Positions 5,701 to 47,230 of a DNA stretch of 64,000 bases are shown here, piece by piece. A program made the translations under genes and the position numbers. This DNA is from Phaeosaccion multiseriatum (Eukaryota; Protista; Ochrophyta, other classes). The stretch spans positions 1,054,001 to 1,118,000 of the forward strand of contig OZ218964.1 in assembly GCA_965112735.1 (NCBI GenBank), given 5' to 3'. The notes under the pieces are model-generated. The model was not told the origin of the DNA. It made no database searches and saw only the letters and a program-made list of their open reading frames with translations. How positions within the stretch are numbered: position 1 is the stretch's first letter; each line of letters starts with the position of its first letter.

Positions 5701-7944
5701 TTGATACCCTGCTCATGAGGGTGGTGCGAACCCTGTCTACCGCCGAGCTGAGCTGTTGAATATTGAACACCATCTCCTCGTCGGCCTCCGCCACCCGGTC
5801 GAAGAGCGCATCTGGAACACCGCCTCTCCTCCTCACGCCCTCGACGGTTACATCGACACTCCCATCCAATCCTCTCAGCATGCCACTCGACTGGTCGGGG
5901 CCCTCACTCTCACCCTGACTTGAATCCTTGCTCTTCCCCCGACCCTCCATCTCTCCCTGCCCTGGTCCGTGCCATCGAGATTGATCCTCACCCCGATCCG
6001 CGCCCATTTCCAGAGAATTGCTGCGCCTGTTTCCATCGCCCTGTCGCCCCTCGCTCATCGGCCCGTCTGCAGCGTCTCTAAAGAGAGCAACGCTGTCCTG
6101 GGCCACAACCAAGGCAGCCTTTAGCTGACCAATCTCCGCCGTTTGGGCAGCGAGGATTTGCTGTGTGGCCTCCAAATCTGCCGTGGTTTCCACAAATGCA
6201 CCGCCTAGAATACGAAATCAGTGTAGAGAGAGACAACAAGAACGGAACAGATACGATCAGGTTTACTCAGTTTTCAGGCCAAATCGCCAAATAAAGCAGT
6301 TGTGGTGGTGGTGGTGGTGATGGTGATGGTGTGGGGGGGCTGGCGTGAGGAGTCAAGAGCCCCAGAGCAGCTCTTGCCTCTCTTTGACTGACTGGCTTCA
6401 CAGACGACAAACCAACACGCACCGAGGTCGCTGGATTCCTGCACCAGGCGTGTTCGTACGTCGTCGCCAGCCTGCACAGCCAAGTCTTTCTCCTTCACCT
6501 GAAGGGAAGAAGGAGCAAGATGAGGCTTAGGAGACCCATACTTGCCACCGCAGTGCCACGGAAAGTCGTGAATCATTTTGCTTGCTCGCTCCCTCTCTCT
6601 ATTGATTGTGTCTCCGGCATCACTTGAACCCACCTCTCCTTGAAGTGCAAGCACCCTCTGCCTCTCTTCCTCCAGGGCCGCCTCCAGCTCCTTCCTCCTT
6701 CCCTCGCTGAACCTGTCGGAGCGAGTGAGAGGCCACCACAGAGAGAGAGAGAGAGACGAGGGGGGCATCGGGGGAGAGACAGGCACAGCAATGAGTCCAA
6801 TGAGTCGGTGAGGTGACCTCCCTTGTTCTGTTGTGCTGTCATTCCGCGACATGGGCGATCGCTTCTGCTTCCCAGGTCGGTGTCAGTCTCTTTCTTCAGT
6901 CGCGAAGATGTATCGTCGGGCGTGTACACTTTTTGCTTCTCCATCTGTTCCATCTCCAATCTTGGACGTCGTCTCTACTCTCTACTCCCTCTCACCTCTC
7001 CCTGGCAGCTTCACGTTCCTCCGGACTGACCGATGTTCCGTCCAACATACTCAGAGAGGGACAGCAGAACACCGAAAAATTGCGGCACTGAGGCAGCTTG
7101 GCGATGGGGTTGTCTCTCAGTGTCACGCTGGCAAGTCCGGTGAGCGGTGTAAGATGGCTTAGGTCCTCGAGCACAGCAAGCTTGTTGCGTGCCAGCCGGA
7201 GGGATTGAAGGGCCACCATTTTGGACAGGGACGCAGGGAGGCGACTCATCGCATTGCCTGGTACGGACACAGAATGCGGACGGAGCGAGGAAGAGGAGGA
7301 GAAGAAGAAGAAGAAGAAGGAGGAGGAGGAGGAGGAGGAGGAGGAGGAGGAGGAGGAGGAGGAGGAGGAGGAGGAGGAGGAGGAGGAGGAGGAGGAGGAG
7401 GAGGAGGAGGAGGAGGAGGAGGAGGAGGAGGAGGAAAAGTAAGGATGATGCTTGGATCTGCTCACCTCACCCCCCCCCCCTGCCAAATGACGAAGGAAAG
7501 GTCTTTGGAGCCTACCACCACGACAAGAGCATTTTCCCCTCTGTAACGTCTGCTGACCTCGTCCACGTCGCAAGTGAATTCTCCCTACCCACCTTCCAGG
7601 TTGAGCTTGCGCAGCCTTGTGCTAAGCGAGAGGACTCCATCTATCCGCCGCAGGCCATTGTCGCTGAGATCCAAAGAAGTCAGCGTCGCCGCCAACCCGC
7701 TTAGAGATTGAACGCTGGTGATGAGGTTGAAGGAGACATCCAGATGCGAAAGTCGCGTCAACGGCATCAGAGGCGCCGCCGTCAACTCCTTAATCTTACC
7801 GCCGGGCATTCGCTTGCGGAGGTTAAGGCTGAGCGACGTCACCTCCGCCAGAGGCGTGTCTCCCACTGTCTGTCTAACGAGCGCGTCTGTGAGGTGCACC
7901 ACGTGGAAGCGGATAGCGGTCGAGTTCGGGCTGGGGCTCCTCAT
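517..7944 (-). CDS. Centriolin-like protein: N-terminal leucine-rich repeats plus LRR-cap followed by a very long coiled coil; about 8 exons
   Basis: SDS22-like LRRs (LSHLDVSFNLITSVQSL, LTSLDLSDNGLRRI, LQSLRLARNKL) and LRR-cap (LRDNPIAKLPQCRNFSVFCCPSLSMLDG). GT-AG exons about 7944-7593, 7257-6996, 6712-6634, 6498-6423, 6204-2779, 2590-2291, 2048-1944, 1707-517, with E/Q/K/R heptad-rich coiled coil. The start may lie upstream (about 8363) and the 3' end may extend to about 165. Confidence 0.75.
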
Positions 7945-36073: not shown

Positions 36074-36267
36074 TTAGTCGTCGCTCTCGGCAGCCTCCGC
36101 CAGCGCCAGCGCCCTCAAATTCACCTATAGGAGGGGGGGTGGATGGCAACACACGGCAACACGCAAAGCAGGGAGCCGAGGTCAGAGGCGTACGAGCTTG
36201 AGACAGCAGCAGTTGGTGGTACAGCAGCAGTTGGTGGTACAGCAGCAGCAGCAGATGCAGCAGCAGC

Positions 36268-36329
<62 letters not shown>

Positions 36330-36573
36330 CAGCAGCACTCGCAGTGGGGCAAAAAAACAAAACAGAAAGGACAAAAAAAAGAAAAAGCTTCGCTGCAAAG
36401 TCAACACCACTCACTACTTGCCTTGGCAGGGTGGTACTTTAGCCTCATCCTCAGCTCCCCCTTGGCGCCCGCGCCTGCTCCATCGAGCGAGTATGAGCGC
36501 TCCACCTCGTTGTTGTTGTGCACCACATCGGCCACTCGAAGGTTGAGGTGCCCAATCTCAGTGTCGTCGCCTG

Positions 36574-36625
<52 letters not shown>

Positions 36626-36656
36626 GCGTGTGTGTATGTGCGTGTGCGTGTGTGTG

Positions 36657-36707
<51 letters not shown>

Positions 36708-39700
36708 GTGTATGTGCGTGTGCAAGGTACGGGAGGCACGGCAGGCAAAGCGGGCAAGGAGGGGAGGAGGAGGTGAGAAGGCGATGAAGCGAAGGTCCCA
36801 TCCATGGCTTCACATGAGAAGCATTGCTTGACCATTGCTTGACCATTGCTAGACCATTGCTTGACCATTGCTTGATTTGATTTGGAGGGGTCTTCTCTGT
36901 CTCTCCATCTCTTTCTCTCTTCTCTCTTTCTCTCCCTCTCGTATCCCTCTCTCTATCCCCCTTCCTCCTTCTCTCTTTCTCTCCGTTCATGTCCCCCACT
37001 CTCTCCTCGACACACCTATCCGTGAGTCACTCTTGACGACAACCTCGAGCATGGCCAAGTCTCTGCCTCTGATGATGAAGTGGAACACCTTGGGGGGGGA
37101 GAGGGGAAAGAGGGATGGCAGTGGATGGGGCGCAAGGGTAGATGAGCAAGTGAGCAAGTCAGCAAACGAAGGAGAAACATAACCAAAGGAAGGGAAGGGA
37201 GACCGCAAGATGATGGTATTCTTCCGCTGAAAGGATCCGATTTTACAGCGCCCATTCCGCGAAAGAAGCACACCCCTGTCCTTGTTGTCGCTCTACCCCC
37301 CCCTCCCTCCCCCTTTTTCTCCCTCGTCCTCCCCCTCCCTCCCCCTCTTTCTCCCTCTTCCTCCCTCCGCTCTATCTCTCCCTTCCTCTTCCTCCCCCTC
37401 CCTCCCTCCCTCCCTCCCTCCCTCCCTCCCTCCCTCCCTCCCTCCCTCCCTCCCTGTCTCTTTACCTCTGTGAAGGCGGACAGACTGGCCTTGAGTGAGT
37501 AAGCAGTCTTCTTCGACGCATTGCCTTGGCGGAAGGTGAGCCTACACTTGGCAGGTTCAATGCCAGACAGCTCCATGCCCACACAGGTCAACACCCCAAG
37601 GTCTGCAAGCAACCAGGGGAGAAGGGGGGGGCGGGGGGCGAGCAATACAGAAGGCGGGTTCGTTCGGTTAGGGTGAAATGAGTATACTTGGGCCCCTCCT
37701 TTCTATCGGAGCACAGGGGAAGGAGGCTGGAGAACGGCCCTATAGCTTGAGGGTATGACAAGGGAGGGCAAGAGGAGAGGTATGGCAAGGGCAGGCACAA
37801 GACGAGAAGACCGGAAGACGCCCCCTCATGCCCCTCATGCACGCCTCCCTCCTCCCCTCCACCCACCCCCCCCCCCCCCTAAACACGGCAACGTACCCGT
37901 GGGGTCGGCGATAGGGGACTCCGCCTGCTCCGCCGGGGCCTCTTCGGCCACGAGCTCCCTTGAGCGCCCCTCCTTGTCTTCGTCCTCCTTGTCTTCGTCC
38001 TCCGCGCCATCACCATCACTGTCGCTGTCATCGTCCTTGTGGCCAATCTTCATTTTGTCGCTCATCTTATCACCAAGCTTGCTCATCTTGTCACTCATCT
38101 TGCTGAAAGTGGAGCCAAACGTGCTCCTCCTCTTTTTGTGCTTCTTGGCCACCGCCTCCGCCTCCTGCGCTCGCTTTGCCTCCTCCACTTCATCCCTAAT
38201 CACCGGAGGCAACGCTTCCTTGGCGGTCAGGACAATGTCGTCCGTCAACGGGTCCTCTCCATCCTTCACCTCGTACAGTACATCAGGGTCTGGCTCCGGC
38301 TCGTTCGTCTCGAGGGGGATGTAGGTCGCTTGCAAAGTGAGGGAGCCGCGTGAAGTCTTGTGCAATGGGAGCGTCATGGTTGTCGTGCTAAAGTCCTTGA
38401 GGGCGGCCAGGCGCAGCTCGCATTTGCCGAGGGTTTCGTCGTTTCCGACGGTGTCGTGGTCAAACAGCTGTAGGGATGCCGGAGGGGAGGGAGAGGGGGC
38501 CGGGGGGGGGGGGCAGGAGATGACAAGAGAGGAGGAGGAGAAGAAGAAGGAGGAGGAGGAGGAGAGATGAAGACACGTCGTTGTACAGACGTCATTGTAC
38601 AGACATGATCGACGACACACATACAGGGAGAGGGCGCATGCGCACGAGAGAGAAGGCAAGAGAGAGATGGAGATCAAAGAGACACACGCATACACACACG
38701 TACCTCCATGTACACGGTCTGCGTGGCGCGGTCGTAGGCCATGAACTCGAACGTTTCATCGAACTTGGGGTTCAAGCAGTTCTGTAACGCCAAAACAAGG
38801 AGGGAGAGAGGAAGGAAGGGAGGGAGAGGGAGGAGGGGTTAAAGGGAAGGATACACAGAGAGAGATATGGAGAGAGAGAGGGAGGGAGGCACACACGCTC
38901 ATACACAAACACACACGCACAAACACACACCTTGATCGTCTTGCTGGTGTACGTGCTGTCACCAAGCTTGACCACAACATAAGGGTCGCTGCTGCTGCCC
39001 GACAGCCCAATGTCCTTGGCCACCAGGTTGTCCGCCTTGACGAGTCGCAGCTGCAGCACGCCAGACGGGGGCGGGCTGGACATGTCACGGATGTCGATGT
39101 CGTCGAGGATGGGTATCACCAACTTCTTGGGGTACAGGAACCAGTTGGCGAGCACGTCCTGTTCGGTGTGTGTGTGTGGAGAGGTAAGGGGAGGAGGAGG
39201 AGGAGGAGGAGGAGGAGGAGGAGGGGGAGGAGGAGGAGGAGGAGGAGGAGGAGGAGGAGGAGGAGGAGGGGGAGAAGGAGAAGGAGGAGGAGGTTAGTTA
39301 GGTATGCCATCACTGGTTGGGTATTGGCGTTACTGGTTGGGATTGATGGTTGGGTTGGGTATTGGCGGTACTGCTTGTACGAACGAGCGTATAGGCCGCA
39401 GTCCGCCGTAGCAAGCGGTAAAGGGAGGGGAGACACAAGTGTGCGCAACGGGCCAAAGGAAGAGAACACAACCCCAGGGGGCAGGTAAGGCCCTGGGGGG
39501 TAGGTAAGACCCTGAGGGGTAGGTAGGCCCCAGGGGGGTAGGGAGGTGTGTACGTGTGTGCGTATGTGTGTGTGCTACTGACCTTGATGATGTTGCTGAT
39601 GGTTGTACCGAGGGACTTCTCCGCAGGGCCGATGCTCATGACATCCAGGGAACCGACCTGGGGATAGGGAGAGAGGGAGGGGCCGGGGGGAGGAGTAGTT

Positions 39701-40779
39701 CAAAGACAAAACGTGAGAGAGGGGGAAGGGGGAGAAGACTGAATCCTGCATCGATACCCTGCCCTATACCCTGCCCTACCCTATACCCTACAGTATACCC
39801 TGCCCTATACCCTGCCCTACCCTATACCCTACAGTATACCCTATGCCCTACACCCTTTACCCTTTACCCTACCCTTTCCTACCCTTAACCCTTCCCTGCC
39901 CTATACCCTATACCCTACACCCTATACCCTATACCCTATACCCCTTCCCCCCCCTCTACACCCCATACTCCACACTCTATACCCTTTACCGTTTACCCTA
40001 CTGCTATATACCCTCCCGTATACACAACCCTGTACCCTATACCCTACCCGATACCCTATTCCCCTACCTTGAAGTTGAAGTCAATGTAGGGCCGTTCCAT
40101 GAAGGTAACGCAGAGGGCTCCGAAGCAGGGAAGCATGGGCACAAGGGGAACAAAGTCGATGCGGGGCTTGCAAGAGAGCTTGATGTTCTTCAGCTCAAGC
40201 ATCAGGGGTAAGCCTTTGCGCCCCACGGCAAGCAGGACGGACGAGTCGCCTGTGGTGGTGTGTGGTGTGTGAGAGGGGGAGGAAGAAGGGGGAGGGGAGG
40301 AAGAGAGCGAGGAGGAGGGGAGAGTTCAGCAAGCAAGTGGAAAGGCTCCCTCCTCACACACGCACCCACGCACCCGCCCGCACCCATCCACTATCCCTCC
40401 CCTTACCCACCGTACCGCACCTGCCCACTTGATCTCCAAATCGAGACTGACACATCCCTCCTCCATATCCAGAACTCGAACCCCCACAATCTTGGGTGCA
40501 ATGAGACCGAGGCTGAGTCGCTTAATGTCCAACGCGGTAATGCCGCCGGGCTTGCAACTGTCCAGGATTGGCTGCACGAGGGGCACAACGAGGGCCTCGA
40601 CGGCGCCGCTCAGAGGCTTCCAGGCCTTCTTTAGCACCTTGTTGAGCCACTCCGCCCGCTCCACCTAAGTGGTAAGGTTTGTGTATGTGTGTGTGTGAGA
40701 GAGAGAGAGAGAGGGAGAGAGTGTATGTGTGTGTTTGTGAGGAGGAGGGAAGAGGGTGTGTGTGTGTGAGAGAGAGAGG

Positions 40780-40810
<31 letters not shown>

Positions 40811-43800
40811 CGTGTATGTGTGTGTTTGTGAGGAGGAGGGAAGAGGGGTGTGTGTGAGAGACAGAGAGGGAAGAAGGGTGTGTGTGTGTGAGAGAGAGAG
40901 AGAGGGTGTGTGTGTGTGTGTGAGAGAGAGAGGGAGAGAGAGTGTATATGTGTGTGTGTGTGAGAGAGAGAGAGTGTGTGTGTGTGAGATAGAGGGTGTG
41001 TGTATCCTCCCCTGCCCCTCTGGCTCACCCACCCATCCACTGCCATCCGCTCGTCCCATGCCATCATCCCCCCCCCCCCCTCTCTCCCTCCTCCTCCTCC
41101 TCCTCCTCCTCCTCCTCCTCCTCCTCCTCCTCCTCCTCCTCCTCTCCCTCCTCCTCCTCCTCCTCCTCCTCCTCCTCCTCCTCCCTCACCTCAGAGTCCG
41201 TGTACCAGCCGGGCAGCTCCGAAGTGATGAGCTTGATCAAGGTTGGGCTCTGCACCACCCCAAGCGCAAATGCCACATCTGCCTGATCCTTCATATTCTG
41301 CGCGTAACTCAACAGAATAAACGACACCGGCAGCACCCAAATGAGCTTCCACTCCATGTAGCCCACCACATACGGCAGCACAGCAAGCGGTGTCAACCAC
41401 AGCGGGCTCACACTCCACGCATTGGACTCCTTTTTGAGGTTCTGAAGCTCCTTGGCAGCCTCCTTGGGCAGCCCCATGTCATTGAGATCGCCCCCCTTCT
41501 TCTTGGCGAGCTTCACCAGAGCGTTGTTGGCGAGCATACGGTGCTCGCGCTGGGCACGAGTCTTCTTGAGCTGCTGCACCGCCAGTTTCTGCAACGCCAT
41601 TTGTAACGGTGGTATGTAACGGTAGGTAGAGGACGGGAGGTTGAGCGAATAAGAGGGGATAGCAACAGAGGGTCTGCAACTCTTATCTTCTCCTCTCCTC
41701 TCCGTATCCGATTCGCCTGCGCGCCCGCCGCATCCCTTCGCGCCTCTTGCCCCAACACAGCCCCACTGCTGGCTGCTGATTACCCTCCCTCCCTCCCTCC
41801 CTCCGCCCCTCCCTCCCTCCCTCCCTCCCTCCCTCCCTCCGCCCCTCCCTCCCTCCCTCCCTCCCTCCGCCCCTCCCTCCCTCCCTCCCTCCCTCCCTCC
41901 CTCCGTCCGTCCGTCCCTCCCTTCCTCTCTCCCTCCCTACCTCCTTCCTTACTTCCTTCTGTCCCTTCCTCCCTCACTTCGCCTCACCTCTCGGACGTCA
42001 AGGGGCGTCTCGTCGATGAGTCCGTTGAGAACATGGCGAATGAGCAACAGCACATGCTCCAGCAGTACACCGAGCAGCACTTTGCCCTCGGTGGAGTGCG
42101 TCAGACTCTCGAGGGAGGTGGGAACCCAAGAGGACATGGTGTCGCTCACGAGGGCAAGGATGAAGCAGTTGGTGATGGTGGCGAAGATGGCCATCACCTA
42201 AGGGCCGGGGAGGGAGGGAAGGAGTGAAGGGAGGGAGGGAGAGAGGGAGAGGGAGGGGTGGTGGAGGGAGGGAGGGATGGATGGAGGGAGAGAGAGAGGG
42301 AGGGGGAGGGAGGGAGGGAGGGAAGGAGGGAGAGAGGGAGAGGGAGGGAGGGTGGGTGGAGGAAGGGGCAAGCAAGGAGAGAGACAGCGGGATAAGAGGG
42401 TGGTGTGCACGGCGACATCCAACATCCAAAGGTATACGGTATCGCAATCAACAACAACATCTCAACTGAAACCGTCAAAATGTCACCCTTTCCCCTCCAC
42501 ACGCCCACGCACCCACCCATGCACCCACCCTCTACCCCACACCCACGCCTTGCACCCCACACCACCGCACACCTCCAAGCATGTCATCCAGCCGCCAATG
42601 TTGGACACGCGCGAGACGAGGGGCCTCCTCGCCCTGCCCAGCTTCGCCAAATCGATGCGGTACTCAAAGTAATTGTTGACCAGCGCGCACAGAGGCGCCA
42701 GTGGGAACGCCACTGCGAACATGCTGCAGTACCCAAACTGAATAACCATCTCGAGGTAGTCGTCTTCAATCACCTCCTCGGGGCTCTGCAGGTCTCGCGT
42801 AAAGTCCTTCACAAGCTTCTCGTCTTCGTCCATCGTCTCGTCGTCGGCGTCACTTTCGCTCTCGGCGTCGCTATCCTCATCACTGTCATCATCCCTTTGC
42901 TTTGCTGCCTCAGCTGCTACCGTGCCCACTGCTTTCTGTACGAGCGAGACTCCAACCTTGGTGGCATTCGAGTCGTCTCCCTCTGCCCCCACCCCTGCTG
43001 CCGCCCCCGCCCCCCCCACCACTGCTGTATTACCAAAGGCCGGTTGCACTGCTGCAGTTCCTACTCCTTCGCCTGCGACTTCCGCCACTGCCCCCGCTGC
43101 GGCGGCCACGGGATCAGTCACTGACGCATCAACCTCAGCAGGCGGTGCCCTGAGCTGGTCCAGGTGCTGCTTAGCCAGCTTGGCACGCTTTGCCCACTTG
43201 CGCTTGAGCTTGGGAATGCCAATCTCCATCATGTTGCCAACAATCTTACAAATGGCGGTGGATGGATGGTGGCAGTAGATGGCAGTGAGTAACAGTGAAT
43301 GGGAGGATTGTGAGTTGTGGGGTCACCATATGTAACTGTCGGACGGCCTTCTCACTCGCAACGTGGGTATCTGACCTACTTCCCTCCCTCCCTCCGTCCC
43401 TCTCTCCGTCCCTCTCTCCGTCCCTCCCTCCCTCCCTCCCTCCCTCCCTCCCTCCCTCCTCCCCACCTGCTTAGTGAAGGTGAGTGTGAAGAGCATGCCC
43501 CTAAGCTGCGCCATGTCCTGCAAGACGAAGCAAGCGTAGAAGAGGGCGGAGTAGCAGTTGACGAACTGGAAGGCGAACATCTTGATGATGAGCATGCGCT
43601 TGGCGATGTAGGCGGTGGGGTGCTCTGGTGGGTAGGGAGAGAGACAGAGGGAGGAGGGGGGAGGGAGGGATGGGATGGGATGGGAGAGAGAGAGAGAGAA
43701 AGAGGGGGGGAAGGGAGAGAGAGGCGGGGTGAGAGAGGGAGGGAAGGGGAGTGGTCAGTTCAGTAGCAGTGTAAGTAGTAGTGTAAGAAGTAGTAGAAGT

Positions 43801-43923
43801 GGTAGTAGTAGTAGCAGTAGTAGTAGTATTAGTAGTAGTAGTAGTGGTAGCAGCAGTAGTAGTAGTAGTAGTAGTAGCAGCAGTAGTAGTAGCAGCAGTA
43901 GTAGCAGCAGTAGTAGTAGCAGC

Positions 43924-43964
<41 letters not shown>

Positions 43965-46900
43965 GAGTAGGAGCGGTAGTAGCACCGGCGAAGGGTCCAG
44001 TAACAGGGTAAGCGATCAGAGACACAACGACCATGTGGTACAAGTGCTCTCCCCGTCCACTGCCATCCACTACCATGCACTGCCACATCCCAAACCCTCT
44101 GCCATCCACTGCCATCCTTCACCTTCAAAGGCGTTGAGCTTGTTGGCGAGCACGGTGTATACCTCGGAGCACACGAGGGGGACCACGGAATAAATGACCA
44201 GCGGCCAGTAGCGCAGAGGAGAGGTGGCGGGGTAGTCTGAAGAGAGGGGGGCGGGGCGAGGGGGAGATGCAGAGAGAGGCAGGACGGAGGGCAAGAAGGG
44301 AGGGAGGGAGGGAGGGAGGGAGGGAGGGAGGGAGGGAGAGAGTGCGTATGTATGTGAAAGAGAGAAAAGGGAGAGGGAGAGATAGGGAGGGAGATAAGAG
44401 AGAGAGTGTACGTGTCAAAGAGGGAAGGGGGAGAGAGAGAGGGGGTGAGTGAGAGAGTGACAGAGACAGCAAAGGATGGCAATGGATGGCAGAGAGGGGG
44501 GTGGGCGGCACGGGATGGGGGCGCACCACCACCACCGCGAGTGAGGAGGAGGTCTCTCGACACTGCACTCGTGAGGCACAGAAGGGCTGGAGGGCAACTA
44601 GCTCACAGGCTAACAAACCATCCCATGTATACCAATACCTACACTTCGCCCCTCCCTCCTCCTCCTCCACCTCCACCTCCTCCTCCTCCCCCTCCTCCTC
44701 CCCCTTCTCCTCCTCCTCGTCCTCGTCCTCCTCCTCCTCCTCTTCCTCCTCCTCCTCCTCCTCCTGCGCATCGCAGAACGCACCTCTGTAGGCGTCTGCG
44801 GGTGGGAGGGAGGGAGATGGAGGGGGGGAGAGGGGGAGGGAGGGAAAGGGAGGGGAAGGGGGAGGGGGGGGGGGAGAGGGCGGGGAAGGGGGAGGGGAGG
44901 GGGGAGGGGGAGGGGGGGGGAGGGAAAGGATGGGGAAGGGGAGGGAGGGAGGGAGGGAGAGGGGAGTCAAGAGACATGGTACGCATACGGGTGAGAAGAG
45001 GAAAAGCAGAGCAGAGCAGTGCTTGTGTGTGTGTGAGGCCCTTCCTCACTGACTTACTGTTGGAGAGCTCGATGCAGTAGAGCATGATCTTGATGACGAA
45101 GTAAATGGACATGAAGATGATGGGCACGGTGATGCCGTACTAAGAGAGGTCAAGAGGGGAGGGGTTTGGGGGTGAATGCGTTGGTTTACCCCATGCCCAG
45201 TCATGCCCATGCAAGCAAGCAAGCAAGCAAACAAGAAGCAAAGATAGACAGCAAGCTAGTTACGTGTGCCCACTTAACAACATGACAATCTGACTTCGCC
45301 CACCCACTAACGCTACTAGTCACTAAACAGCAACTATACAAGCCACGTCACTAACCTTGGTGGCGGGGGAGGTCTTGGGCATGCCTGCCTTCTCAGCGAT
45401 GGCCTCCAAGTTGGTCTCCTCCTCCACCCCATGCACATCCCACTTCAGCGCCACCTTGCTGTTCTCGCGCTTCCAGAACTGCAGCCACACCTGTTGGTGA
45501 TATGGTACGGTGGTGTAAGTGTGGCAACAAGCAGCCAGGCAAGAGGTGTGAGAGAGAGAGAGAGAGAGATGACGACGATGACGGAAGGAGGGCATGAATG
45601 ATGTGTGAGAAATGCGTCATTTCCAGGTTTAGGAGTACGGCCCGGCTGGTCCACACAACCAGAAGAGGACTGCCATACACACGCACTCGCACTGCACGCA
45701 ACTCACTCACTCACTGACTCACTCTCCCCCTCCCTCACTCCCCCCATACCTCTCCCCTTCCCTCTCCTCAACTCACGGTGGACCACATCGCCACTACGAT
45801 GCAGAAGGCAGGTACGAGTCCATCATCTCTGTCTCCAATGATCCACTCCCGCAAGAAGAGCAGCAGCCCGAAGCCCGCCGGGGCGACGAGGGCCCAGGTG
45901 TAGTAGCGCTGCCAGGCGAAGTACATGGCCACACCCGAGCCAAAGTAGGCGTCCACTTTGTCGGCCGACTTGTCCCGCATGAGCTCCTGGTAAGGGAGGG
46001 GGGGGGCGGGCGTGTGTGTGAAGGAGAGGGGGTGGGGAGGGGCTTGGTTGGGTGGGTTTCGGCGGTTTCGGCCGTTTCGTTTCGACGATATCTGGGGCAA
46101 TATCGGATCGCGAGAAACTGATCCGCGCCCCCCGCTGGCCACTTGTAGACACTTTTGTGTGTGTCACTTCCCTCGCAGGGAGTCTCTTGACATGTAGAGA
46201 AGACGTCATTATGGGTCATTATGTGTCTTCGATCGGGGCGGGGGAAGTGTAGAGTACAAATACAAATGCATCTTCTTGACGTCCTACAGAAATGGTCCTA
46301 ACGTAACTGTAACTAGCGCTATACCTCACCTTCAATTGCTTGCGGTCGTGCAGGAGAAAGATGTTCGTGAACACAAGGTCGGATCTAGGGCACACGGACA
46401 CAGCGAAAGGAGGGTTCGGCCCAGGGGGGAGGCGACGAGGCGTGAGAGAGATGAGATAGAGGAGAGCAGAGATCGGGGGGAGGTAATGCGATGAGAAGAA
46501 AGGAAGGAAGGAAAGCGGTGTCGCCACACACACAAAGGGAGAGGGGTGGACAGCGCAGACTTGAAGAAAGACGTTCTCCCCACGACAGCACCTCTGGATG
46601 ATGAGGATGGCCTGCTCTGCCAGCCTTGCCCTCTCCTTGGGCTTGTAGTCAGTTCCCTCTTTGAGGCGGGGAAGGTCCACAATGAGGGCGCACTTGAGAA
46701 GCAAACGGGGCCCCAAGGCCACCGCGATCTGCGGACGCGGGTATTGAAGAGAAACAAGAAATATTTGTCGATCGCCCCATCTTTCTAACAGTATCCGCGC
46801 AGTCCCTCCCCTTTCCGTACTCCCCATGCCGCACCCGACCCTTTGTCATACCCCACACGCACATACGCTGCCGCCCCTGCCAATTATTCACGGTGCTCTT

Positions 46901-47230
46901 TGAACCTTCTCAGAACAGTGGTTTTTCTTCCATCGCACCCACCGTGTAGGTCTCGTCCTCTTCCTTGAACACATGCGAGATGAGGAAGCCTCGCTCCCGC
47001 AAGAGCTGCTCCACGACAACCCTGTCTCCCCACACGCCTGTGATGCCGATCTCCGCTTTCTTTATGCTTGCGGCGGCCCCAGCTGCCTTGGCATTTCCAA
47101 CCACGTTCGCTTCAGCTGTAACCTCCTGCGCAGCCTTGGCGAACATATCCGCGGCACTTGGCGAGTGCACGGACATCTCTTCTATGTCTCCCCTTATTCT
47201 CTCTCGGCTCGGTGTGCACCCCGGCACCAT
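36074..47230 (-). CDS. Anoctamin/TMEM16 fused to an extended-synaptotagmin-type hairpin-SMP-C2-C2 module (22 exons, about 1478 aa)
   Basis: Anoctamin exons 47230-46943, 46728-46592, 46384-46330, 45986-45777, 45490-45356, 45139-45058, 44795-44607, 44236-44123, 43624-43467, 43244-42573, 42197-41988 ([40 protein letters not shown]...[20 protein letters not shown]). Phase-0 intron 41987-41589. Then exons 41588-41190, 40664-40421, 40249-40068, 39657-39583, 39158-38931, 38781-38704, 38467-37897, 37602-37466, 37088-37016, 36570-36422, 36124-36074 ([37 protein letters not shown]). All phases are consistent. Each half is confident (about 0.9); the fusion is less so. Confidence 0.75.
36822..36875. repeat. 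11-bp intronic minisatellite (TTGACCATTGC)n
   Basis: About 4.5 copies visible. Confidence 0.85.
39755..40060. repeat. Degenerate CCCTATA/CCCTAC telomere-like tandem array inside an intron
   Basis: Dozens of CCCTATA, CCCTAC and CCCTG units between the exons at 40068 and 39657. Confidence 0.8.

What the first reader, a model, noticed from the sequence alone, without database searches (positions are those of the whole stretch)
36074..47230. Anoctamin/TMEM16 fused to an SMP-C2-C2 lipid-transfer module: candidate one-chain scramblase plus lipid shuttle for membrane contact sites
Seen in sequence: the last anoctamin exon ends DETPLDVRE at a strong donor (GAG|GTGAGG, 41988/41987). A pyrimidine-rich acceptor (TTGCAG|AAA, 41589/41588) resumes in phase 0 with KLAVQQLKK, then runs into a hydrophobic hairpin, an SMP domain ([10 protein letters not shown]...LPCFGAL) and two C2 domains. 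All 22 exons give one open frame of about 1478 aa. The TMEM16 Ca2+-site residues (N/E in GNMME, D/E in DDYLEM, E/D in FEYRID) and all five C2A aspartates (KD, SDPY, FDHD, NDE) are intact. Established: TMEM16s are Ca2+-activated scramblases or channels; E-Syts/tricalbins are SMP-C2 ER-plasma membrane tethers that shuttle lipids; yeast Ist2 (TMEM16) and tricalbins act at the same contacts; bulk lipid transfer is paired with scramblases in ATG2-ATG9 and VPS13A-XK. Inference: this is a Rosetta-stone fusion coupling Ca2+-gated lipid transfer and leaflet re-equilibration in one protein. Topology fits, since the TMEM16 C-terminus is cytosolic. I know of no characterised example.
Basis: partly seen in the sequence, partly recalled or inferred. 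Interest (0 to 1): 0.92.

Follow-up and report, generated by a model that had tools for sequence, protein, structure and literature searches.

The report
Scramblase fused to lipid-transfer tether
A stramenopile alga makes one messenger RNA and one roughly 1,470-residue protein that joins a calcium-activated TMEM16 lipid scramblase to an extended-synaptotagmin-like lipid-transfer module; related algae share this unstudied fusion, which suggests the two activities work together at membrane contact sites.

Summary
On the minus strand, 22 GT-AG exons (ATG 47230 to TAA 36074) give one open frame of 1,467 aa: N-terminal domain, TMEM16/anoctamin, helical linker, hydrophobic hairpin, SMP, C2A, linker, C2B.

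Spliced contigs show this in two RNA-like public runs of this organism, one from another sample with 3 SNPs. These contigs chain anoctamin exons to SMP exons.

Relatives encode the same architecture:
- Three carry it as single uninterrupted ORFs: P0002, P0009 and P0061.
- It also appears in transcriptomes or gene models of Tribonema, Epipyxis, Spumella, an Ochromonadaceae species and MMETSP samples.
- A conserved motif spans the junction without a gap.

The TMEM16 Ca2+-site residues and the five C2A aspartates are intact and conserved in the family. The closest solved structures are human TMEM16K (an ER scramblase) and E-Syt2.

Function is inferred, not shown. I read it as an ER-anchored, Ca2+-regulated tether and lipid shuttle with a built-in scramblase. 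The yeast Ist2-Osh6 result (PMC12617493) is a non-covalent precedent.

Such proteins sit unannotated in databases, and five literature searches found no paper on the fusion. The scan had not noted it before.

The parts
36074..47230 (-). Whole coding region: 22 exons, 4,404 nt of CDS, 1,467 aa, from ATG 47230 to TAA ending at 36074
   Evidence: Model. One BLASTP segment covers residues 60-1193 against the single-ORF homologues P0061 and P0009.
46330..47230 (-). Exons 1-3 (47230-46943, 46728-46592, 46384-46330): N-terminal cytosolic domain, aa 1-160
   Evidence: An in-frame TAA lies directly upstream of the ATG. Residues from about 60 onward align to the N-terminal domains of P0002, P0009, P0036 and P0050. 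The first 60 aa are not conserved.
41988..45986 (-). Exons 4-11: TMEM16/anoctamin membrane domain, aa 161-738. Coordinates: 45986-45777, 45490-45356, 45139-45058, 44795-44643, 44236-44123, 43624-43467, 43244-42573, 42197-41988. Ca2+ site: N448, E451, D606, E609, E638, D642.
   Evidence: Pfam PF04547; tblastn colinearity; nhTMEM16 alignment; family conservation. RNA contigs confirm the boundaries of exons 10 and 11.
44643..44795 (-). Putative exon 7: in-frame poly-Glu insert in the TM3-TM4 loop. Unverified; skipping it also keeps the frame.
   Evidence: Absent from all eight homologues in the alignment. It lies on a (CCT)n/(GAG)n microsatellite. The reads laid did not cover it.
41589..41987 (-). 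Intron 11, 399 nt, GT..AG, (CCCT)n-rich on the + strand. This is the junction between the anoctamin half and the SMP-C2 half. It holds the read-through stop at 41951-41949 and the rival ATG at 41600.
   Evidence: A joint from 41588 to 41988 skips 399 bases with ends CT..AC in X24 (depth 28.2) and X25 (depth 677.5). Both runs have zero intron depth there, while the DNA-like runs X19 and X23 cover the intron.
41190..41588 (-). Exon 12, aa 739-871: charged helical linker, hydrophobic hairpin (about aa 797-836, window 41414-41295) and the start of SMP ([10 protein letters not shown])
   Evidence: This exon alone finds 45 representative proteins; at least 12 of the 19 scanned with Pfam carry Anoctamin upstream in the same chain. 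Hydropathy is and the hairpin alignment.
39583..40664 (-). Exons 13-15 (40664-40421, 40249-40068, 39657-39583): SMP lipid-binding domain, aa 872-1038
   Evidence: Pfam PF17047/PF25669 hits on the exon pieces. The colinear region of P0002 matches E-Syt2 4p42 at 1.7e-41. RNA joints confirm introns 41189-40665 and 40420-40250.
38300..39158 (-). Exons 16, 17 and the start of 18 (39158-38931, 38781-38704, 38467-): C2A, with Ca2+-binding D1087, D1096, D1143, D1145 and D1150
   Evidence: Pfam C2 at 24.7 bits against a cut-off of 22; family alignment.
37897..38299 (-). Rest of exon 18: low-complexity basic and acidic linker between the two C2 domains
   Evidence: Model. The region is poorly conserved.
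36408..37602 (-). Exons 19-21 (37602-37466, 37088-37016, 36570-36408): divergent C-terminal C2 (C2B) without the Ca2+-binding aspartates
   Evidence: Aligns to the C-terminal C2 of homologues (tblastn). Pfam C2 on the homologous pieces: P0013 1.4e-16, P0014 25.3 bits, the others below cut-off.
36074..36113 (-). Exon 22: short terminal exon and stop codon. Weakest part of the model.
   Evidence: Dynamic-programming model only. No homology support.

Best explanation
SHOWN. This is one gene, one spliced mRNA and one open reading frame. The encoded membrane protein has about 1,470 residues, in this order: N-terminal cytosolic domain, ten-helix TMEM16/anoctamin module, a conserved helix that continues from TM10 across the former 'gene boundary', a charged linker, a hydrophobic hairpin, an SMP lipid-binding domain, a Ca2+-binding C2A, a low-complexity linker and a second C2. 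The architecture is a conserved family in ochrophyte (stramenopile) algae.

INFERRED mechanism:
- The TMEM16 module resembles TMEM16K and the fungal scramblases and keeps an intact Ca2+ site. With the hairpin, it anchors the protein in one membrane, most likely the ER.
- The SMP-C2-C2 arm lies in the cytosol, because the TMEM16 C-terminus is cytosolic and a hairpin does not cross the bilayer.
- The C2 domains bind a facing membrane in a Ca2+- and acidic-lipid-dependent way, as in E-Syts and tricalbins.
- The SMP domain moves glycerolipids to or from the cytosolic leaflet, and the adjoining scramblase re-equilibrates the two leaflets of the anchoring membrane. Transfer is then not limited to one leaflet.
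- A rise in Ca2+ would switch on tethering, transfer and scrambling together.
- TMEM16 proteins and E-Syt SMP domains are both two-fold dimers. TM10 and the C-terminus lie at the TMEM16 dimer interface, so a 2:2 assembly with an SMP dimer under the scramblase dimer is geometrically plausible. This last point rests on published structures, not on a test done here.
For: Transcript evidence:
- X24 contig 16 (1,384 nt) and X25 contig 18 (3,179 nt) chain 42983-42570 | 42194-41988 | 41588-41194 | 40666-40420 | 40248-40066.
- The joint from 41588 to 41988 skips 399 bases with GT..AG ends on the minus strand.
- Both runs have zero depth in the introns. X25 comes from another sample and study and carries 3 SNPs.

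Orthologues:
- P0002 (gene 4,257 nt for 1,418 aa; ORF check), P0009 (4,059 nt for 1,352 aa) and P0061 (4,041 nt for 1,346 aa) are uninterrupted ORFs with Anoctamin+SMP+C2.
- All 11 hits carry Anoctamin+SMP. Of the 10 hits, 7 carry Anoctamin+SMP and an eighth Anoctamin+C2.
- Transcript-derived members come from a Tribonema gayanum Trinity contig and from MMETSP; EukProt gene models come from Epipyxis and Spumella.

Seamless junction:
- tblastn gives P0002 684-758 against 42197-41973 and 753-885 against 41591-41184; P0014 residue 377 lies on both sides.
- The motif D-x-P-x-x-[IV]-x-E-x-x-A-[KR] spans the splice site, with an invariant Ala three residues into exon 12.

Activity-relevant residues are conserved across the family. 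The closest structures are TMEM16K 5oc9 (4.6e-56; model TM-score 0.72) and E-Syt2 4p42 (1.7e-41).

Functional precedent: Ist2 scramblase activity sustains Osh6 lipid transfer (PMC12617493).
Against: - No activity, localisation or protein-level data exist for any member.
- Logan contigs prove each splice adjacency but not a single full-length molecule, and they drop rare isoforms. A minor unfused transcript cannot be excluded.
- The AlphaFold model of a homologue has low confidence in the linker, hairpin and SMP (pLDDT about 40-68), so the inter-domain geometry is untested.
- TMEM16 family members can be channels rather than scramblases.
- One divergent fused member (P0067) has lost the Ca2+-site residues, so scrambling may not be essential to the architecture.
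- The identity of the partner membrane (plasma membrane, plastid envelope or other) is unknown.
Confidence: 0.7

Rival explanations
1. Two adjacent genes. The anoctamin gene ends at the read-through stop at 41949. A separate SMP-C2 gene starts at ATG 41600 (MALQKLAV...). The in-frame splice is a coincidence.
For: An in-frame ATG lies 12 nt upstream of the acceptor, and a stop lies 36 nt past the donor. Some database entries hold SMP-C2 only, for example P0008 (714 aa), P0010 and P0019.
Against: Spliced contigs in two RNA-like runs remove exactly 41987-41589, and neither run has depth in the intron. Intronless orthologues encode both halves in one ORF. A conserved motif spans the junction. P0008 is the C-terminal half of the 1,390-aa P0050 in the same 90% cluster. 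Many of the 'SMP-only' entries (Logan, ENA) are probably ORF fragments of contigs rather than gene models, which I inferred and did not check.
Confidence: 0.02
2. A real fusion without coupling. The TMEM16 half serves only as a membrane anchor, a tether or a Ca2+-activated ion channel. The SMP-C2 arm works like any E-Syt, independently of scrambling.
For: TMEM16 family members include pure channels. E-Syts work with a simple hairpin anchor. The fused member P0067 has lost the Ca2+-site residues. Function cannot be read from sequence.
Against: The six Ca2+-site residues are conserved in nearly all fused members over deep divergence, down to 24-35% identity. This argues for a regulated activity rather than a passive anchor. 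The hairpin anchor is retained as well, so an extra anchor is not needed. The nearest structure is the ER scramblase TMEM16K. Ist2 scrambling measurably sustains shuttle-type lipid transfer (PMC12617493).
Confidence: 0.2
3. The fused precursor is cleaved after translation in the linker, giving a separate scramblase and a separate E-Syt-like protein that merely share expression.
For: The linker between TM10 and the hairpin varies in length and is charged; it is about 40-60 residues longer in Epipyxis and P0050. It is predicted with low confidence.
Against: No protease site or precedent is known. The sequence just after TM10 is the best-conserved part of the linker and is predicted as one continuous helix, 693-721 in P0009. 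The fusion is kept over deep divergence.
Confidence: 0.05

Closest known systems
Human TMEM16K/ANO10 (ER lipid scramblase; PDB 5oc9, 6r7x) and the fungal scramblases nhTMEM16 and afTMEM16
   Same: They are the best sequence and fold matches to the TMEM16 half: 4.6e-56 for P0002 and TM-score 0.72 for the P0009 model. They share the N/E, D/E and E/D Ca2+ site in TM6-TM8 and have cytosolic N- and C-termini.
   Different: The known proteins end soon after TM10. Here TM10 continues into a conserved helix, a hairpin, an SMP domain and two C2 domains. There are also large low-complexity inserts in loops.
Extended synaptotagmins (E-Syt1-3), yeast tricalbins and plant SYT1
   Same: They share the order hydrophobic hairpin, SMP, C2 domains. 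P0002 882-1210 matches E-Syt2 SMP-C2A-C2B at 1.7e-41. C2A keeps the five Ca2+-binding aspartates.
   Different: The canonical family has a free N-terminus with the hairpin as its only anchor, and three to five C2 domains. Here the N-terminus is a complete TMEM16 protein and there are only two C2 domains.
Yeast Ist2 with Osh6/Osh7
   Same: This is the closest functional analogue: an ER TMEM16 scramblase whose C-terminal extension reaches another membrane and carries a shuttle-type lipid-transfer protein. Scrambling sustains the transfer (PMC12617493; PMC8282664).
   Different: Ist2 uses a disordered tail with a polybasic plasma-membrane-binding end and recruits an ORP-family protein non-covalently. 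Here the arm is folded (SMP-C2-C2) and covalently attached.
Bridge-type transfer protein and scramblase pairs (ATG2-ATG9, VPS13A-XK)
   Same: The logic is the same: lipid delivery to or from one leaflet is paired with leaflet equilibration.
   Different: Those pairs are separate polypeptides. They use chorein-N/RBG bridge proteins and scramblases unrelated to TMEM16.

Membership tests
TMEM16/anoctamin | Match to Pfam PF04547 above the gathering score | tested here: met
   Four exon blocks score 109.3, 52.0, 33.7 and 31.3 bits against a cut-off of 28.
TMEM16/anoctamin | Acidic/polar Ca2+ site in TM6-TM8 (N, E; D/E, E; E, D) | tested here: met
   N448, E451, D606, E609, E638 and D642 are present. 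They align to nhTMEM16 GDYREM and NNWVELRSD and are conserved in the fused family.
TMEM16/anoctamin | Ten-helix TMEM16 fold | tested here: met
   Shown for a homologue, not for the window protein itself. The P0009 model scores TM-score 0.72 (normalised to the target) against TMEM16K. The window protein aligns to P0009 over residues 60-1193.
TMEM16/anoctamin | Ca2+-activated scrambling or ion conduction | not testable with these tools
   Needs reconstitution or electrophysiology.
E-Syt/tricalbin (SMP-C2 tethers) | SMP (TULIP) lipid-binding domain | tested here: met
   The window exons give sub-threshold Pfam hits because introns split the domain: 28.0 bits against 35 and 21.0 against 27. The colinear homologues pass, at 48.9-61.5 bits against 27. 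P0002 matches E-Syt2 4p42 at 1.7e-41.
E-Syt/tricalbin (SMP-C2 tethers) | Hydrophobic hairpin directly upstream of SMP | tested here: met
   Two short hydrophobic helices at about aa 797-836, with a conserved Pro and a Y-x-Q-x-x-K-D end. In the P0009 model they are helices 755-769 and 775-801.
E-Syt/tricalbin (SMP-C2 tethers) | C2 domains after SMP, with C2A carrying Ca2+-binding aspartates | tested here: met
   C2 scores 24.7 bits against 22. Five aspartates are present. A second, divergent C2 is supported through homologues.
E-Syt/tricalbin (SMP-C2 tethers) | Hairpin as the sole N-terminal membrane anchor | tested here: not met
   A full TMEM16 protein precedes the hairpin in the same chain. 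This is therefore not a canonical E-Syt, although the arm should work like one.
Ist2-type TMEM16 tether | Long disordered C-terminal tail ending in a polybasic plasma-membrane-binding motif | tested here: not met
   The C-terminal extension consists of folded SMP and C2 domains, and the protein ends in the acidic sequence ...AEAAESDD.

The most novel reading that the evidence does not exclude
The fusion may be an obligate 2:2 machine. An SMP dimer would sit directly under the two lipid grooves of the TMEM16 dimer. Lipids would then pass straight from the scramblase groove into the SMP tunnel, under one shared Ca2+ signal. That would be direct substrate channelling between a scramblase and a shuttle-type transfer protein. 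In algae with secondary plastids it could act at ER-plastid envelope contacts rather than ER-plasma membrane contacts. If so, unfused TMEM16K/Ist2 and E-Syt/tricalbin proteins of animals and fungi may form the same complex non-covalently.
Probability: 0.15. Interest if true: 0.9.

Novelty: new variant of a known kind. Interest (0 to 1): 0.76.

Why it matters
How shuttle-type lipid-transfer proteins at membrane contact sites cope with moving lipid into or out of only one leaflet is an open question. Pairing with scramblases is established for bridge-type proteins (ATG2-ATG9, VPS13-XK). For a shuttle it was shown only recently (Ist2-Osh6, PMC12617493).

A natural, conserved and transcribed fusion of a TMEM16 scramblase to an E-Syt-like SMP-C2 arm is independent evolutionary evidence that these two activities belong together. 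It predicts a TMEM16-E-Syt/tricalbin partnership in organisms where the two are separate proteins.

It also offers a single-chain system in which coupling can be tested by mutating one half. Finally, it gives an annotation to a set of database proteins now labelled only 'calcium-activated chloride channel-domain-containing protein' or 'hypothetical'.

Tried and rejected
1. My first two gene models were wrong in places. The crude model skipped small exons. The second one added three spurious upstream mini-exons, a false intron at 43064-42936 and a donor 30 nt too far downstream at 42543. I corrected these with the homologue alignment and the RNA contigs.

2. The first run search listed only metatranscriptomes holding 5-8% of the sampled words, which I attribute to shared microsatellite words. 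I first took this to mean that no RNA of this organism was available. Laying the runs of unknown kind showed that X24 and X25 are RNA-like.

3. The profile search with alignment A1 added no new fused members, because the word index draws on the first 500 residues only. It did find an unfused Tribonema minus paralogue, P0071.

4. The ESM Atlas search returned only ordinary SMP/E-Syt clusters, so no cluster of 50 or more members carries the fusion.

5. Five full-text searches found no paper on a natural anoctamin-SMP fusion.

6. I did not build a tree to test for a single origin. Many SMP-only hits look like ORF fragments of unannotated contigs, so 'unfused' labels would be unreliable.

7. The AlphaFold model of P0009:1-1200 is too uncertain in the linker, hairpin and SMP to say anything about docking.

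8. I could not name the organism of the window or of the NCBI assemblies GCA_024449895.1 and GCA_024449835.1.
Full report
**What is in the sequence**

The feature lies on the minus strand. The last anoctamin exon ends ...DETPLDVRE at GAG|GTGAGG (41988/41987). After a 399-nt intron made largely of a (GGAG/GGGA)n microsatellite, the acceptor TTGCAG|AAA (41589/41588) resumes in phase 0 with KLAVQQLKK. Two facts supported the rival 'two genes' reading. Reading through the donor hits TAA at 41951-41949. An ATG at 41600 is in frame with the downstream exon, giving MALQKLAV....

Pfam confirms the domain content on raw exon translations:
- Anoctamin (PF04547) in four blocks, at 109.3, 52.0, 33.7 and 31.3 bits against a cut-off of 28;
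- SMP in 40329-40664 and 40059-40325;
- C2 in 38775-39293 and 37838-38755.

**Gene model**

I wrote a small dynamic-programming exon chainer that scores codon usage and GT/AG sites, with a bonus for tblastn-supported frames. I then corrected it against an alignment with eight homologues and against RNA contigs.

The result is 22 exons, 4,404 nt of CDS and 1,467 aa, from ATG 47230 (with an in-frame TAA directly upstream) to TAA at 36074.

Two parts remain soft. Exon 7 (44795-44643) is a poly-Glu insert on a (GAG)n microsatellite that no homologue has, and it can be skipped in frame. The 40-nt terminal exon has no homology support.

The 1,467-aa product aligns to P0061 and P0009 in one BLASTP segment, residues 60-1193, at 35% identity and E = 0. 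That segment covers the N-terminal domain, TMEM16, the junction, the hairpin, SMP and C2A.

**The decisive test: transcripts**

Two run searches found runs of one organism, coded G, that hold the locus. I laid four of them on 40000-43500.

X19 and X23 behave as DNA. They cover the unique intron sequence at 41638-41775 (between the masked repeats) and show no joint at this junction.

X24 comes from the same sample as those DNA runs. X25 comes from another sample and study and has three SNPs. Both have zero depth in the introns and carry spliced contigs:
- X24 record 16 (1,384 nt) reads 42983-42570 | 42194-41988 | 41588-41194 | 40666-40420 | 40248-40130.
- X25 record 18 (3,179 nt) has the same chain and continues about 1.9 kb further downstream.

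The joint table lists 41588 to 41988, 'skips 399', with ends CT..AC, which is GT..AG on the coding strand.

X25 is labelled 'DNA?' only as a guess. Its zero intron depth, together with the absence of the joint from the DNA-like runs, shows that the joined form is RNA-derived and not a genomic retrocopy.

A contig across two genes does not normally prove one transcript. Here, however, the link is a precise in-frame GT-AG excision, which requires both exons to lie on one pre-mRNA.

The caveat is that contigs prove adjacencies, not single full-length molecules, and they hide rare isoforms.

The same contigs confirm three further introns: 42572-42198, 41189-40665 and 40420-40250. The second of these removes an in-frame poly-Glu tract.

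**Relatives**

I searched 1.84 billion representative proteins with exon 12 alone, the exon just after the junction. This gave 45 hits. In the long ones the match lies deep inside the protein, for example P0002 at 757-884 of 1,418 aa.

Pfam shows Anoctamin+SMP(+C2) in one chain for P0001, P0002, P0005, P0009, P0013, P0014, P0015, P0026, P0036, P0037, P0038 and P0042. Further searches added P0061-P0067, P0075-P0077 and P0079, the last with Anoctamin and C2 only.

Three of these are uninterrupted ORFs on genomic contigs, so no gene-prediction artefact is possible:
- P0002: 4,257 nt for 1,418 aa; the ORF was verified as 2890-7257 of L001.
- P0009: 4,059 nt for 1,352 aa.
- P0061: 4,041 nt for 1,346 aa.

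Transcript-derived or labelled members are:
- a Tribonema gayanum Trinity contig;
- MMETSP transcripts (P0076, P0081, P0087);
- Epipyxis sp. PR26KG and Spumella vulgaris (EukProt gene models);
- Tribonema minus KAG5191948.1, also UniProt A0A836CNP9;
- Ochromonadaceae sp. KAJ1422214.1.

The family therefore spans at least Chrysophyceae and Xanthophyceae, plus this unidentified alga. Other readers of this genome took it for a stramenopile, which fits these hits.

**The junction is conserved**

The tblastn segments abut without gap or overlap. P0002 684-758 matches 42197-41973 and 753-885 matches 41591-41184; P0014 residue 377 lies on both sides.

In the family alignment the motif D-x-P-x-x-[IV]-x-E-x-x-A-[KR] straddles the splice site. 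The invariant Ala lies three residues into exon 12. In the AlphaFold model of P0009 this region is one helix (693-721) that follows TM10.

**Functional residues and nearest structures**

The TMEM16 Ca2+ site is N448 and E451 in TM6, D606 and E609 in TM7, and E638 and D642 in TM8. It matches nhTMEM16 and is conserved in nearly all fused members. The divergent P0067 has lost it.

C2A keeps D1087, D1096, D1143, D1145 and D1150. The C-terminal C2 is divergent and lacks these residues.

The best solved relatives of P0002 are human TMEM16K/ANO10 (5oc9, 4.6e-56) and E-Syt2 SMP-C2A-C2B (4p42, 1.7e-41, residues 882-1210).

The P0009:1-1200 model has a mean pLDDT of 63.7. It is good in the TMEM16 and C2A parts and poor in the linker, hairpin and SMP. 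Foldseek returns TMEM16K first (TM-score 0.72, normalised to the target) and E-Syt2 eighth.

**How it most likely works (inference)**

TMEM16 termini are cytosolic in the nhTMEM16 and TMEM16K structures, and a hairpin does not cross the bilayer. The SMP-C2-C2 arm is therefore cytosolic and anchored to the same membrane as the scramblase. By analogy with TMEM16K, Ist2 and the E-Syts, that membrane is probably the ER.

I propose a Ca2+-switched contact-site protein. The C2 domains engage the facing membrane. The SMP domain moves glycerolipids to or from the cytosolic leaflet. The TMEM16 module equilibrates the leaflets of the anchoring membrane.

[quoted passage not shown] Dimer-on-dimer geometry is plausible from known structures but is untested.

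**Rivals**

- Two genes: contradicted and by the intronless orthologues; I put it at about 2%.
- Fusion without coupling, with the TMEM16 half acting as anchor or channel: about 20%. The argument against is conservation of the Ca2+ site and retention of the hairpin; the argument for is P0067.
- Post-translational cleavage: about 5%.

**Comparison and novelty**

Each half is a clear member of a known family, but the whole is not a canonical E-Syt (its N-terminus is a TMEM16 protein) and not an Ist2-type tether (its arm is folded, not a disordered polybasic tail).

Members sit in public databases as 'calcium-activated chloride channel-domain-containing protein' or 'hypothetical protein'. Five full-text searches found no description of the fusion. 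No large ESM Atlas cluster carries it.

I class it as a new variant of a known kind. Its interest is high because it is a natural Rosetta-stone link between TMEM16 scramblases and SMP-type shuttles, and because coupling can be tested within a single chain.

Noticed in passing
window 41070-41189 and 44655-44765: Two (GAG)n/(CCT)n microsatellites read as in-frame poly-Glu tracts next to real exons. RNA contigs show the first is intronic (intron 12). The second lies inside putative exon 7 and may be intronic too.
   Followed up: partly
window 36200-45000 (introns of this gene): Nearly every intron is filled with microsatellites: (CCCT)n, (TG)n, (AGT)n, (GGA)n and a TACCCTA-like 7-mer array at 39754-40063. 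These low-complexity words probably explain the 5-8% 'holders' among unrelated metatranscriptomes.
   Followed up: partly
window 40359-40379 and 42504-42532: The DNA-like runs X19 and X23 hold short contigs that join about 40374 to about 42505, with only 21 letters on the shorter side and extra letters in between. These are probably repeat-induced assembly-graph links, not a rearrangement.
   Followed up: no
P0067 (ENA contig, 1,397 aa): This divergent fused member has lost the TMEM16 Ca2+-site residues (TKVIS, FLDS, NTMVNSTMD) but keeps SMP and C2. It may be a degenerate scramblase half retained as an anchor.
   Followed up: no
P0065 / L003 (Tribonema minus KAG5191948.1, gene span 24 kb): The deposited model carries a duplicated-looking insert, YLELAIQLVI, inside the TM7 Ca2+ motif, and it lacks the N-terminal third. 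It looks like a mis-predicted splice site in the public annotation. Tribonema minus also has an unfused anoctamin paralogue, P0071.
   Followed up: partly
P0069 (EukProt Bolivina argentea) against P0063 and P0070 (NCBI assemblies): A protein filed under a foraminiferan transcriptome sits in the same 90% cluster as the intronless NCBI ORF P0063 and is 84% identical to P0009. It probably comes from an associated or ingested alga rather than from the foraminiferan. The NCBI contig name (JAANTA011482278) implies an assembly of more than 11 million contigs.
   Followed up: no
L002 7097-7870 and the P0009 locus 6878-7741: A calponin-homology (CH) domain gene lies directly downstream of the fused gene in both intronless loci. 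This is local synteny between two related genomes.
   Followed up: no
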